The translations under genes were made by a program, and so were the position numbers. DNA of 64,000 bases from Octopus sinensis (Eukaryota): positions 22,361 through 86,360 of the forward strand of contig NW_021830467.1 in NCBI RefSeq assembly GCF_006345805.1, read 5' to 3'. This document shows, piece after piece, positions 18,297 to 20,345 of this stretch (its first letter is position 1; each line of letters begins with the position of its first letter). The notes under the pieces are model-generated. The model was given only the letters and a program-made list of their open reading frames with translations, was not told the DNA's origin and searched no databases.

Positions 18297-18392
18297 TAAA
18301 ATGGGTACCAGTTCAACACTGAGGTCGATGTAATCCACTTCCCCACTTCACGAGTTCGCTTGCTTTGTGACAAAATTTCAAATCAACATCAT
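18297..18392 (+). mobile_element. SINE family A, 3' half, tail type 3
   Basis: GTACCAGTTCAACACTGAGGTCGATGTAATC...TTGTGACAAAATTTCAAATCA then (ATT)n. Confidence 0.6.
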
Positions 18393-18402
18393 TATTATTA
18401 TT

Positions 18403-18545
18403 GGGTGAGAGAGCAGTGCATGCCATCAAAGTGACACTGGGGTAAAATATACGAAGCCCAGTATACCCATCATGACTACCCGTCTGATAAGGGTACACTA
18501 GGCACATGCATCACAACCATATGTGCGCGACATGGTGATCTCATA

Positions 18546-18548
<3 letters not shown>
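18403..18548 (-). mobile_element. Element E, 146-bp 3'-terminal fragment
   Basis: Matches 12652-12797; (TTA)n on both sides. Confidence 0.85.
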
Positions 18549-18597
<49 letters not shown>

Positions 18598-18631
18598 GTT
18601 ATTATATATTATTATTATATTATTATCATTA

Positions 18632-18663
<32 letters not shown>

Positions 18664-18673
18664 TATTATTATT

Positions 18674-18819
18674 GAGTGAGAGAGCAGTGCATGCCATCAA
18701 AGTGACACGGGGGTAAAATATACGAAGCCCAGTATACCCATTATGACTACCCGTCTGATAAGGGTACGCCAGGCACATGCATCACAACCATATGTGCGCG
18801 ACATGGTGATCTCATATCA
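18674..18819 (-). mobile_element. Element E, second 146-bp 3'-terminal fragment
   Basis: Same breakpoints as 18403-18548, with a few substitutions. Confidence 0.85.
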
Positions 18820-18855
<36 letters not shown>

Positions 18856-18858
<3 letters not shown>

Positions 18859-19658
18859 TAGTTTTATTTTTATAGCGTGCTTTCACTTCACTACCGAGCG
18901 CAGCTCTGTGTGCCTTGGGTATGTGCTGTGATTTGTTGTGATGCTCTGATGGTTATTGTATGGAAAGTGTTCTGCGTAGGATGTGTGCAGTGCCTAGTAG
19001 TGCAATTTTCTGTATGTTATATGTGTTTGTAAGTCCTGGTGTTTTTGTTATGTATTTGTCTGAATATTTTCCTTCCATATTTTATATGTATGTGTTGTTG
19101 TATTTTCATTTTTTGGGTAGAGCATTGCTGTGAAGTATGCGTGTAAGATAGAAATGTATTCCTCGTGTCCATTACGTCTTTTGGGTTTTATTTGCGGGAC
19201 ATGAGGTACAACGTCCGGCCCATTATTTTGACGGTCGTCATTTTCGTAGGGTACCGGTCCGTTTATTTCTGTTGTCACATTATTTCGCACGTGTAGTTTT
19301 TCGTACATTTTTTGTTGTAAGTTTAATGTACGTACCGCTCGATTGTTATTCTTGGGTTGAATAGTATCGGTGGCATTTAATTTCTTCGTAGTTCCTTTGT
19401 ACATGGTGTTTGAGGTCGGGATGATCGTGATGTTCCACGCATGTTTACATGTGTTGTGTTAGAGGTGGAGATAATATCGAGTCAAAATACATCATTTCGT
19501 TTCGAAAATAGTAATAAATTTCAATTAGTATTACTTACTCGGATACAATCCAATTCTTTGTTAGTAAATCTTTGGCTCCATAGGATGTCCTTGTTTTCGA
19601 TGTTTGTGGATAGATTTCGGAGCTCTGTATTTTCCTTCTTACATCTTAAACGTCCCCG

Positions 19659-19659
<1 letters not shown>
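18856..19659 (-). mobile_element. R4/Dong-like RLE retrotransposon, internally deleted (lineage D1)
   Basis: Putative 5' region and N-terminal ORF (19404-19048, ...KPKRRNGHEEYISILHAYFTAMLYPK...TYKIW) joined to the C-terminus SDKYITKTPGLTNTYNIQKIALLGTAHILRRTLSIQ* and a 3' UTR ending ACTACTG|(AAT)n. Confidence 0.75.
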
Positions 19660-19694
<35 letters not shown>

Positions 19695-20237
19695 GAGTGA
19701 GAGAGCAGTGTATGCCATCAAAGTGACACAGGGGTAAAATATACGAAGCCCAGTATACCCATCATGACTACCCGTCTGATAAAGATACTCTAGGTACATG
19801 CATCACAACCATATGTGCGCGACATGGTGAACTCATATCAAGATAAACAGCACATGACCTTGCAGGTGGGGCCCAGTTAGAATTTTCTTCTGGTCGAGTA
19901 ACCCATCCCGCTCAAAAGGTCCCTGAATAAGGGTTAAGGATGTTGAACGAAACACCCATGTTTCCAGAGGTGAATTATTCAAACCCCAAAGAATCCCTCT
20001 CAACACATGAGTATGAAGCTCCCCCATTACTTCTGTTCGTCATGAGAGATGCACATATCGTCAGCCACTAAGGGACATGCTCAACTGGTTAAGGTCAAAC
20101 AACTGACACGCAAACCTTTGGTATTGAGCAAAATATTTGCTGTAGCACATCTTTTATACCAAGACAAAACAATGTACATGATAACACTTCAAACCAGTTA
20201 AGATCAGAAGCCATGAGAGCCACTGCATCAGAGCATT
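19695..20237 (-). mobile_element. Element E, near-full copy (543 bp)
   Basis: Same two ends as 12652-13208; short deletion at the repeated GCAGT near the 5' end. Confidence 0.85.
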
Positions 20238-20262
20238 ATTATTATCATTATTATTATTATCA

Positions 20263-20322
<60 letters not shown>

Positions 20323-20345
20323 CATTATTATTATCATTATTAAGA

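What the first reader, a model, noticed from the sequence alone, without database searches (positions are those of the whole stretch)
18297..20340. Same-orientation pile-up in (TTA)n: a self-renewing microsatellite landing pad (cluster 1)
Seen: the (ATT)n tail of a plus-strand SINE is followed by E fragment, E fragment, D1 deletion derivative and full E. All four are on the minus strand and each is separated by (TTA)n. Established: Dong (R4 clade) of Bombyx inserts into (TAA)n. Inference: SINE (ATT)n tails create targets, RLE elements and passengers insert antisense to the SINE, and each insertion leaves fresh target on both sides, which would help build the large (TAA)n fields of this genome.
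Basis: partly seen in the sequence, partly recalled or inferred. Interest (0 to 1): 0.7.

Follow-up and report, generated by a model that had tools for sequence, protein, structure and literature searches.

The report
Dong-type retrotransposon pile-up in (TAA)n
A stretch of TAA/TTA simple repeat, lying between two old SINEs, has been hit at least four times in one orientation by a known kind of repeat-targeting jumping gene (a Dong/R4-type LINE) and its short passenger.

Summary
At 18297-20340 a 5'-truncated plus-strand SINE with an (ATT)4 end is followed by four minus-strand elements, each bracketed by (TTA)n:
- two 145-bp 3' fragments of a ~540-bp non-coding element (E);
- an internally deleted LINE (D1);
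- a full-length E.

D is an RLE-type LINE. Relatives have RT, a C-terminal CCHC and an R2-like KPD..D..K nuclease, no APE domain and no N-terminal zinc finger. They sit head-to-tail in (TAA)n in other animals. That is the published R4/Dong architecture and target.

Window-wide, 11 D-like or E insertions at five loci all have sense (AAT)n at the 3' end. Nine also have it directly at the 5' end, six of them 5'-truncated. The repeat is therefore a target, not only a tail, and insertion is strand-specific.

- **SINE tails seed the arrays:** one SINE copy has a clean 16-bp target duplication and no (ATT)n. SINEs themselves pile up in the arrays on the opposite strand.
- **Insertions build the (TAA)n fields:** arrays show internal segmental duplications, and the largest (908 bp) holds no visible element.

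Verdict: a new member of a known kind, of modest interest.

The parts
18070..18290 (+). Old tRNA-derived SINE (subfamily I call S2). Its 5' flank is a decayed (ATT)n-like stretch.
   Evidence: B-box-like GAGTTCGAATTCC and body similarity to 12 other SINE copies, 69-79% identity.
18297..18390 (+). Second, 5'-truncated SINE 3' fragment (S3 type, ending ...AAATTTCAAATCAACATC). The SINE core motif occurs twice in 18070-18390, so SINE_A is two elements head-to-tail.
   Evidence: SINE_A 227-271 matches the core of other copies.
18391..18402 (.). (ATT)4. The only repeat between the SINE 3' end and the antisense E 3' end (tail-to-tail junction).
18403..18547 (-). E fragment 1: the 3'-terminal 145 nt of E, 5'-truncated.
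   Evidence: 94.6-96.6% identity to the other E copies; alignment.
18548..18673 (.). (TTA)n spacer with interruptions.
18674..18818 (-). E fragment 2: truncated at exactly the same nucleotide as fragment 1.
18819..18855 (.). (TTA)n spacer.
18856..19658 (-). D1, an internally deleted Dong/R4-type LINE. 18856-19070 is the last 41 codons plus a ~100-nt 3' UTR. 19071-19658 is the 5' UTR plus ~118 N-terminal codons.
   Evidence: 100% identity over 215 bp to L003. tblastn 95% to P0268 residues 644-684. Translation, with the N-terminal EEY...W motif seen in full-length relatives.
19659..19694 (.). (TTA)12 spacer.
19695..20234 (-). Full-length E (~540 nt), non-coding. It shares its 5' terminus GCYCTGATGCAG with the copy at 12652-13207.
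20235..20342 (.). (TTA)36 at the 5' side of the upstream-most E. It is not the tail of any same-orientation element, and it abuts the 5' end of SINE_B.
20343..20470 (+). 5' part of another old tRNA-type SINE (SINE_B).
12652..13207 (-). Second full-length E (E#1), between a 450-bp array (12202-12651) and a 240-bp array (13208-13447). No SINE adjoins it.
43954..46040 (+). Cluster 2, the mirror image of cluster 1: D' (second Dong-like family) 43954-44510; (AAT)n; D#2 44710-45404; (AAT)n; E#5 45442-45895; (AAT)n; D#3 45923-46040. It is followed by (AAT)n 46041-46309 and the 3' end of a minus-strand SINE at 46310. A minus-strand SINE at 43761-43953 precedes it.
47714..47983 (+). F, the 3' end of a third Dong-like family (...TAHILRKILSM* plus 3' UTR), 5'-truncated. 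(AAT)13(GAA)14 lies upstream and (AAT)11 downstream.
31885..32094 (-). Second F copy, 5'-truncated. It is a solitary insertion with (AAT)11 at its 5' side and (AAT)~33 at its 3' side, with no neighbouring element.
11504..11515 (-). 12-nt stump of the E 3' end directly after the (ATT)n-like tail of a plus-strand S3 SINE.

Best explanation
Cluster 1 is a serial, strand-specific pile-up of (TAA)n-targeting non-LTR retrotransposons inside one (TTA)n array. The array lay between two old, tandem, plus-strand tRNA-SINEs.

The autonomous partner is family D, with relatives D' and F. It is a single-ORF LINE with reverse transcriptase, a C-terminal CCHC knuckle and a restriction-like endonuclease: the R4/Dong type. 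D1 is an internally deleted copy. E is a ~540-nt non-coding element that carries the same (UAA)n 3' tail.

Inferred mechanism, by analogy with R2 and Dong:
1. The endonuclease nicks the (TTA)n strand of the duplex.
2. The exposed ...TTA-3' end pairs with the (UAA)n tail of the RNA and primes reverse transcription.
3. The cDNA is joined upstream, often after premature termination, which gives 5'-truncated copies.

The break lies inside the repeat, and the RNA brings repeat units of its own. Every new copy is therefore bracketed by (TAA)n in its own sense orientation, and the site stays a target. That is why successive insertions stack in one orientation.

Shown here: element identities, junctions, orientation, RLE-type architecture, the same habit in relatives elsewhere, and use of the site at different times (SINEs 69-82% alike, E copies 92-97%, D1 3' end 100% identical to L003). 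Inferred: the cleavage chemistry, mobilisation of E by D-type proteins, and the order of individual events.
For: **Element identities**
- E copies.
- D1 3' end 100% identical to L003 over 215 bp and 95% to P0268. D#2 is 82% and D#3 84% identical to L003.

**RLE-type LINE**
- full-length relatives have RVT_1 in the middle, a C-terminal zf-RVT match and no APE domain.
- the best solved-structure matches are R2 proteins (E 5e-28).
- a profile of the D C-terminus aligns with the R2 CCHC and KPD...D...K nuclease.
- of 83 full-length relatives, 80 have the C-terminal CCHC and only 1 has a zinc-finger-like motif N-terminal of RT.

**Target, not only tail**
- 11 of 11 have sense (AAT)n at the 3' junction and 9 of 11 at the 5' junction. 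Six of those nine are 5'-truncated copies.
- a solitary truncated F copy has (AAT)11 upstream and no neighbouring element.
- both full-length E copies start at the same nucleotide, directly after 108 and 240 bp of repeat that is no element's tail.

**Same habit elsewhere**
- L004 has two full-length relatives head-to-tail, separated by (TAA)5-6.
- L006 has three different Dong-like families in one orientation within 1 kb, separated by (AAT)6-7.
- tails in L001, L002, L003 and L005.

**Literature**
- Dong targets (TAA)n in Bombyx, Anopheles and the snail Biomphalaria (PMC3812793), and in most insects, molluscs and cnidarians (PMC7998251).
- Bombyx Dong is co-transcribed with upstream TAA repeats and self-cleaves at its 5' junction (PMC3774820).
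- Dong-R4 is the most abundant recently active LINE group in Octopus vulgaris (PMC13282606).
Against: - No RT phylogeny with named R4/Dong, HERO, NeSL or R2 references could be run, so clade assignment rests on architecture, target and literature.
- The source organism is not verified. It looks like an octopus only from my recollection of the SINEs.
- E and D share no detectable 3' sequence or structure beyond the tail (z-scores 0.14 to -0.59). E's dependence on D is therefore inferred only from shared tail, target and orientation.
- D' has a SINE body, not (AAT)n, at its 5' junction. F_47.7 has (GAA)14 there.
- A diverged internal D-like fragment (39475-39732) and an old E-like fragment (28900-29051) lie outside arrays.
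- The two E fragments share one truncation point, so one of the four 'insertions' may be a local duplication.
- No empty site is available to show the pre-insertion array.
Confidence: 0.8

Rival explanations
1. Tail only. D and E simply end in a (TAA)n tail made by the reverse transcriptase and insert anywhere. The clusters arise because the region passively accumulates repeats.
For: All elements carry the repeat at the 3' end. In L001 a relative has only ~4 units followed by unique sequence. The window is generally very rich in microsatellites of many kinds.
Against: Nine of 11 copies have sense (AAT)n immediately 5', and six of these are 5'-truncated, where the repeat cannot be part of the transcript. 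The solitary F_31.9 and E#1 have 5' arrays that are no other element's tail. Orientation is uniform within each array. The background frequency of the repeat is ~2% per strand. Dong's target specificity is published (PMC3812793, PMC7998251).
Confidence: 0.05
2. Local DNA-level duplication. Unequal exchange or replication slippage within the repeat copied 'element plus array' units, so the pile-up is not a series of retrotranspositions.
For: E fragments 1 and 2 end at the identical nucleotide, 271 bp apart. The arrays show higher-order duplications with shifts of ~67/133/202 bp and ~350 bp.
Against: The order of elements is heterogeneous: E, E, D1, E in cluster 1 and D', D#2, E, D#3 in cluster 2. 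Ages differ widely: D1 3' end 100% identical to L003, against 82-84% for D#2 and D#3. The two E fragments are no closer to each other (96.5%) than to copies 6 and 27 kb away (95.7-96.6%). They share no private substitutions. At most this explains one of the four elements.
Confidence: 0.1
3. SINE (ATT)n tails found the arrays, RLE elements then enter antisense, and the tails they add are a major builder of the genome's large (TAA)n fields.
For: There are three tail-to-tail junctions between a SINE 3' end, (ATT)n and an antisense E or D 3' end: 18391-18402, 46041-46309 and 11498-11515. SINE copies are more diverged than E and D. S2 and S3 SINEs usually end in (ATT)n.
Against: An S2-type SINE with a clean 16-bp target-site duplication has no (ATT)n. 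S1 SINEs end in (AT)n, (GATG)n or nothing. S2 SINEs also have (ATT)n at the 5' flank and stand head-to-tail in it (47182-47602 and SINE_B), so they may be landing in pre-existing arrays. E#1 and F_31.9 have no SINE beside them. The largest array (908 bp) has no element at either end. Arrays grow by internal duplication. Typical tails are only ~15-25 bp.
Confidence: 0.3

Closest known systems
Dong (Bombyx mori), DongAg (Anopheles gambiae) and DongBg (Biomphalaria glabrata): R4 clade, RLE-type non-LTR retrotransposons
   Same: Single ORF with RT, C-terminal CCHC and restriction-like endonuclease, and no N-terminal zinc finger (architecture described in PMC7998251). Insertion into (TAA)n with the repeat on both sides (PMC3812793, PMC7998251, PMC3774820).
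   Different: Clade membership was not checked by RT phylogeny. No HDV-like 5' ribozyme could be recognised at the D1 5' end, whereas Bombyx Dong has an active one (PMC3774820). In this window the elements sit in arrays of hundreds of bp and are mixed with a non-coding passenger.
Dong-R4 LINE families annotated in Octopus vulgaris and O. bimaculoides
   Same: If the window is from an octopus, D, D' and F are very probably among these families. Five recently active Dong-R4 families with 1129 insertions are reported (PMC13282606). A full-length Dong consensus exists for O. bimaculoides (PMC9115989). D1's 3' end, 100% identical to an independent contig, fits recent activity.
   Different: The passages of those papers that my term searches returned say nothing about target-site structure, pile-ups, passengers or the relation to SINEs; I did not read the papers in full. 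The identity of the organism and of the families was not verified here.
Other microsatellite-specific LINEs: Waldo (ACAY)n, Mino (AC)n, Kibi (TC)n, Koshi (TTC)n, Togen (TG)n, and some HERO families
   Same: The same strategy of landing in a simple repeat, which is harmless to the host (PMC3812793, PMC4640811).
   Different: Different repeat. Most of these (R1-clade Waldo, Mino, Kibi, Koshi) use an APE endonuclease, not an RLE.
Tail-into-tail nesting of LINEs and SINEs, such as Zepp clusters in Chlorella or insertions into Alu A-tails (from my own knowledge, not checked here)
   Same: A new copy lands in the 3' tail of an older copy, giving same-orientation stacks.
   Different: Those cases involve poly(A) and an AT-preferring APE nuclease. 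Here the tail is a trinucleotide repeat that matches a sequence-specific RLE target.

Membership tests
RLE-type non-LTR retrotransposons (R2/R4/NeSL/HERO/CRE group) | Reverse transcriptase domain in a single large ORF | tested here: met
   RVT_1 in P0009, P0015, P0025, P0041, P0061 and P0010. P0268, the closest relative of D, carries RVT_1. The window copies themselves keep only the ORF ends.
RLE-type non-LTR retrotransposons (R2/R4/NeSL/HERO/CRE group) | C-terminal CCHC motif followed by a PD-(D/E)xK restriction-like endonuclease, and no N-terminal APE endonuclease | tested here: met
   The profile of the D C-terminus aligns with the R2 CCHC and KPD..D..K region. R2 proteins are the best PDB matches. 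No Exo_endo_phos hit in six relatives. CCHC is present in 80 of 83 full-length relatives. The degraded D#2 copy in the window still reads CRICG...RPGIVV...LIDASIP.
R4/Dong clade | Placement with R4 and Dong in an RT-domain phylogeny | not tested
   No named R4, Dong, HERO or NeSL reference sequences were available in the tools. Names in the protein database are uninformative.
R4/Dong clade | No N-terminal zinc fingers; a diverged SANT/Myb-like N-terminal domain (PMC7998251) | tested here: inconclusive
   Absence of zinc fingers is met: 1 of 83 has a ZF-like motif N-terminal of RT. A conserved W[ST]..E...VM..Y motif occurs in 54 of 83 and, degraded, in D1. Pfam gives no Myb/SANT hit on single sequences. 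The paper needed HHpred.
R4/Dong clade (Dong subgroup) | Insertion into (TAA)n, with the repeat flanking both ends in the sense orientation | tested here: met
   (11 of 11 at the 3' junction, 9 of 11 at the 5' junction). L004 and L006 pile-ups.
R4/Dong clade (Dong subgroup) | HDV-like self-cleaving ribozyme at the 5' end that processes a co-transcript with upstream TAA repeats (PMC3774820) | tested here: inconclusive
   No Rfam match. A crude home-made descriptor found nothing at the D1 or L004 5' ends. These ribozymes have little sequence conservation, and only one D 5' end was available.
SINE (for element E) | Internal RNA polymerase III promoter derived from tRNA, 5S or 7SL RNA, and a 3' end shared with a partner LINE | tested here: not met
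   No tRNA-like gene and no Rfam match. Only weak A/B-box-like strings by eye. No 3' similarity to D beyond the (AAT)n tail. E is better called a non-autonomous, (TAA)n-tailed retroposon of unknown transcription.

The most novel reading that the evidence does not exclude
The (TAA)n/(TTA)n arrays may be two-way, strand-asymmetric landing pads. tRNA-SINEs that end in (AUU)n enter on one strand, and Dong-type LINEs and their passenger, which end in (UAA)n, enter on the other. Each class's repeat end would then be the other's target, and the two classes would keep re-seeding the same arrays.

In the strongest form, the SINEs would prime from the second-strand nick of the Dong endonuclease.

The window shows the antisense relation at all four shared loci. 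It also shows SINEs head-to-tail in (ATT)n. It cannot show cause.
Probability: 0.2. Interest if true: 0.55.

Novelty: new member of a known kind. Interest (0 to 1): 0.33.

Why it matters
This is a clean, multi-generation example of how a sequence-specific RLE retrotransposon keeps re-using one microsatellite.
- It adds a non-coding passenger (E) and an internally deleted derivative (D1) to the Dong repertoire of what is probably a cephalopod genome. Dong-R4 elements are reported to be the most abundant young LINEs in such genomes.
- It warns annotators that long (AAT)n tracts here are mosaics of repeat and short element stumps, some as short as 12 nt.
- The strict antisense relation between SINEs and Dong-type elements in the same arrays is a cheap hypothesis to test genome-wide. 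It bears on how SINE/LINE tails and microsatellites feed each other.
- It does not change what is known about Dong targeting.

Tried and rejected
- **tRNA and RNA families:** ARAGORN and Rfam at gathering and relaxed thresholds gave nothing for E, D1 or the SINEs. The CrcZ and CRISPR hits are chance matches in the repeat.
- **Shared 3' hairpin:** folding the last 120 nt of E, D and D' to look for a shared recognition hairpin gave energies no better than shuffles. Only the unrelated L004 3' UTR folds significantly (z = -4.3).
- **5' ribozyme:** a home-made HDV-like double-pseudoknot descriptor on the 5' ends of D1, E and L004 found nothing for D1 or L004. The hits for the two E copies were inconsistent and shuffle-level. 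Rejected as evidence either way.
- **More E copies:** an exact 30-mer scan of metagenome contigs found none.
- **Full-length D 5' ends:** a homology search with the D1 N-terminal ORF found no hits. An exact look-up of the D1 ORF found none on record.
- **Organism identity:** paper searches for the assembly and run accessions and for SINE strings found nothing. The search for octopus (AAT)n literature was uninformative.
- **N-terminal domain:** Pfam on the N-terminal motif gave no Myb/SANT hit.
- **L007:** this contig is a chimeric assembly and was not used.
- **E as the 3' UTR of a longer LINE:** considered and rejected, because two copies share one 5' terminus directly after the repeat.
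Full report
**1. What is there**

The window is AT-rich animal DNA packed with microsatellites. Pure (AAT)n/(ATT)n alone makes up about 3.8 kb of 64 kb.

An old plus-strand tRNA-type SINE lies at 18070-~18290. A second, 5'-truncated SINE follows at ~18297-18390 and ends in (ATT)4. Four minus-strand elements come next, each separated by (TTA)n:
- E fragment, 18403-18547
- E fragment, 18674-18818
- D1, 18856-19658
- full-length E, 19695-20234

After 108 bp of (TTA)n, the 5' end of another plus-strand SINE begins at 20343. 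The five long E copies in the window align cleanly. Read on their own strand, every E or D ends ...CTCACTC(AAT)n or ...ACTACTG(AAT)n.

**2. What D is**

A stitched translation of the degraded D copy at 44710-45404 found short relatives. A profile of these found 17,743 relatives.

- Full-length relatives are 1100-1350 aa. They have RVT_1 in the middle, a C-terminal zinc knuckle and no APE domain.
- The best matches among solved structures are R2 proteins.
- The profile of the D C-terminus aligns co-linearly with the R2 CCHC motif and the KPD...D...K restriction-like nuclease.
- Of 83 full-length relatives, 80 have the C-terminal CCHC. Only one has a zinc-finger-like motif N-terminal of RT. Fifty-four share an N-terminal W[ST]..E...VM..Y motif.

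This is the architecture described for R4/Dong: RT plus REL-endonuclease, no N-terminal zinc finger, and a diverged Myb-like N-terminus (PMC7998251). I could not run an RT phylogeny with named references, so the clade assignment remains a well-supported inference.

D1 is indeed a deletion derivative. Its last 215 bp are 100% identical to an independent Logan contig (L003), which continues upstream into an intact RT-RLE ORF. They encode the last 41 residues of that ORF. Its first ~590 bp carry an ORF start with the family's N-terminal motif.

The window also holds:
- two older D copies, 82-84% identical to L003;
- a second Dong-like family, D', at 43954-44510;
- a third family, F, at 47714-47983 and 31885-32094.

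**3. Tail or target**

Over all 11 D-like or E insertions:
- the 3' junction is sense (AAT)n in 11 of 11;
- the 5' junction is sense (AAT)n in 9 of 11.

Six of those nine are 5'-truncated copies, for which the upstream repeat cannot be part of the transcript. Inside a stack, the upstream repeat could be the previous element's tail. Three outermost or solitary cases exclude that:
- E#1, with 240 bp upstream;
- the full-length E of cluster 1, with 108 bp upstream that ends at a SINE 5' end;
- the solitary truncated F_31.9, with (AAT)11 upstream and unique DNA beyond it.

The two exceptions are D', which abuts a SINE body, and F_47.7, which has (GAA)14 between it and (AAT)13. The strand-specific repeat starts at only ~2% of positions.

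Relatives elsewhere behave the same way. L004 has two full-length copies head-to-tail with (TAA)5-6 between and before them. L006 has three different Dong-like families in one orientation within 1 kb, separated by (AAT)6-7.

The literature states that Dong targets (TAA)n in insects, molluscs and cnidarians (PMC3812793, PMC7998251). It also shows that Bombyx Dong is transcribed together with upstream TAA repeats and cleaves itself off at the 5' junction (PMC3774820). The repeat is therefore a target, insertion is strand-specific, and each copy remains embedded in target.

**4. What E is**

E is ~540 nt and non-coding. Its 5' terminus is defined by two copies.
- It has no tRNA-like or Rfam-recognisable head.
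- It shares no sequence or significant structure with the D 3' end apart from the tail.

Its mobilisation by Dong-type proteins is inferred from three shared properties: the (AAT)n tail, the (AAT)n target and the orientation. It does not meet the definition of a SINE as tested. An old E-like internal fragment lies outside any array (28900-29051).

**5. Timing**

SINE copies are 69-82% identical to each other. E copies are 92-97% identical. D#2 and D#3 are 82-84% identical to L003, and the D1 3' end is 100% identical to it. The site was therefore used repeatedly over a long time. SINE subfamily differences inflate the first figure, so the order 'SINEs first' is likely but not proven.

**6. The SINE part of the model**

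*In favour.* There are three tail-to-tail junctions of the form SINE 3' end, (ATT)n, antisense E or D 3' end. They lie at 18391-18402, at 46041-46309, and at a 12-nt E stump at 11504-11515. SINEs and Dong-type elements are antisense at every shared array.

*Against SINE tails as founders.*
- An S2-type SINE at about 23655-23832 has a clean 16-bp target-site duplication and no (ATT)n.
- S1 SINEs end in other repeats.
- S2 SINEs have (ATT)n at their 5' flank too, and stand head-to-tail in it (47182-47602; SINE_B).
- SINE_A itself is two SINEs head-to-tail.

The simplest reading is that both classes land in the arrays, on opposite strands.

**7. Do insertions build the (TAA)n fields?**

Each insertion trivially leaves repeat on both sides. 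Several observations argue against a large contribution:
- The 450-bp and 908-bp arrays carry repeated interruption patterns at shifts of ~67/133/202 bp and ~350 bp, which indicates internal segmental duplication.
- The largest array has no element at either end.
- Tails of relatives in other animals are ~15-25 bp.

Insertion tails can account for only a small part of the repeat. The identical truncation point of the two E fragments may itself reflect such a local duplication. However, the fragments are no closer to each other than to distant copies.

**8. Verdict**

It is best explained as a stack of Dong/R4-type, (TAA)n-specific retrotranspositions and a passenger. That is a known kind of system, already reported as abundant in octopus genomes (PMC13282606, PMC9115989). 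The 'self-renewing pad' follows directly from inserting into a repeat while carrying the same repeat as a tail.

SINE seeding and array building are possible but not shown. The strict antisense sharing of arrays by SINEs and Dong-type elements is the one aspect worth a genome-wide test.

Noticed in passing
window 47714-47983 (+) and 31885-32094 (-): A third Dong-like LINE family (F). Only the last ORF codons (TAHILRKILSM*) and a ~250-nt 3' UTR with a C-run and A/T-runs are present. Both copies are 5'-truncated and embedded in (AAT)n.
   Followed up: partly
window 43954-44510 (+): A second Dong-like family (D') with an internal deletion. Its 5' end abuts the 5'-truncated head of a minus-strand SINE, head-to-head, with no repeat between them.
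   Followed up: partly
window 47182-47602 (-): Two S2-type SINEs head-to-tail, with (ATT)7 between them and (ATT)n upstream. SINEs pile up in the same arrays on the strand opposite to the Dong-type elements.
   Followed up: partly
window ~23655-23832 (+): An S2-like SINE with a 16-bp target-site duplication (AATATAATCCTTCAGG / AATGTAATCCTTGAGG) and no (ATT)n tail. It lies about 1.2 kb downstream of the pogo/Tigger-like ORF.
   Followed up: partly
window 11498-11515: A 12-nt stump of the E 3' end (GGGTGGGAGAGC) directly after the (ATT)n-like tail of an S3 SINE. It shares the GGGTG variant with E fragment 1, which also follows an S3 SINE tail. Whether this is coincidence or a copied unit is unresolved.
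   Followed up: partly
window 18403-18547 and 18674-18818: The two E fragments are truncated at exactly the same nucleotide, 271 bp apart. This could be a local duplication, a truncation hot spot or a short subfamily.
   Followed up: partly
window 14624-15531 and 12202-12651: Very long (AAT)n arrays (908 and 450 bp) with higher-order repeated interruption patterns (~350 bp and ~67 bp multiples). The arrays expand by segmental duplication.
   Followed up: partly
window 22027-22494 (+): An ORF with a CENP-B N-terminal HTH domain and a weak, sub-threshold Tc5 transposase HTH match. It is a pogo/Tigger-like DNA transposon remnant.
   Followed up: partly
window 39475-39732 (-) and 28900-29051 (+): A diverged internal Dong-like RT fragment (53% aa identity to P0268) and an old E-related internal fragment (69% identity). 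Neither adjoins an (AAT)n array.
   Followed up: no
L004 1-9570; L006 1-1020: Contigs from unrelated samples show the same habit. L004 has two full-length Dong-like elements head-to-tail with (TAA)5-6 spacers and a strongly structured 3' UTR (z = -4.3). L006 has three Dong-like families in one orientation within 1 kb.
   Followed up: partly
window, all D/D'/F/E 3' junctions: In all four families the body is followed by the repeat in the same phase (...N|AATAAT). This may reflect a constraint on the RNA 3' end or on the priming register.
   Followed up: no
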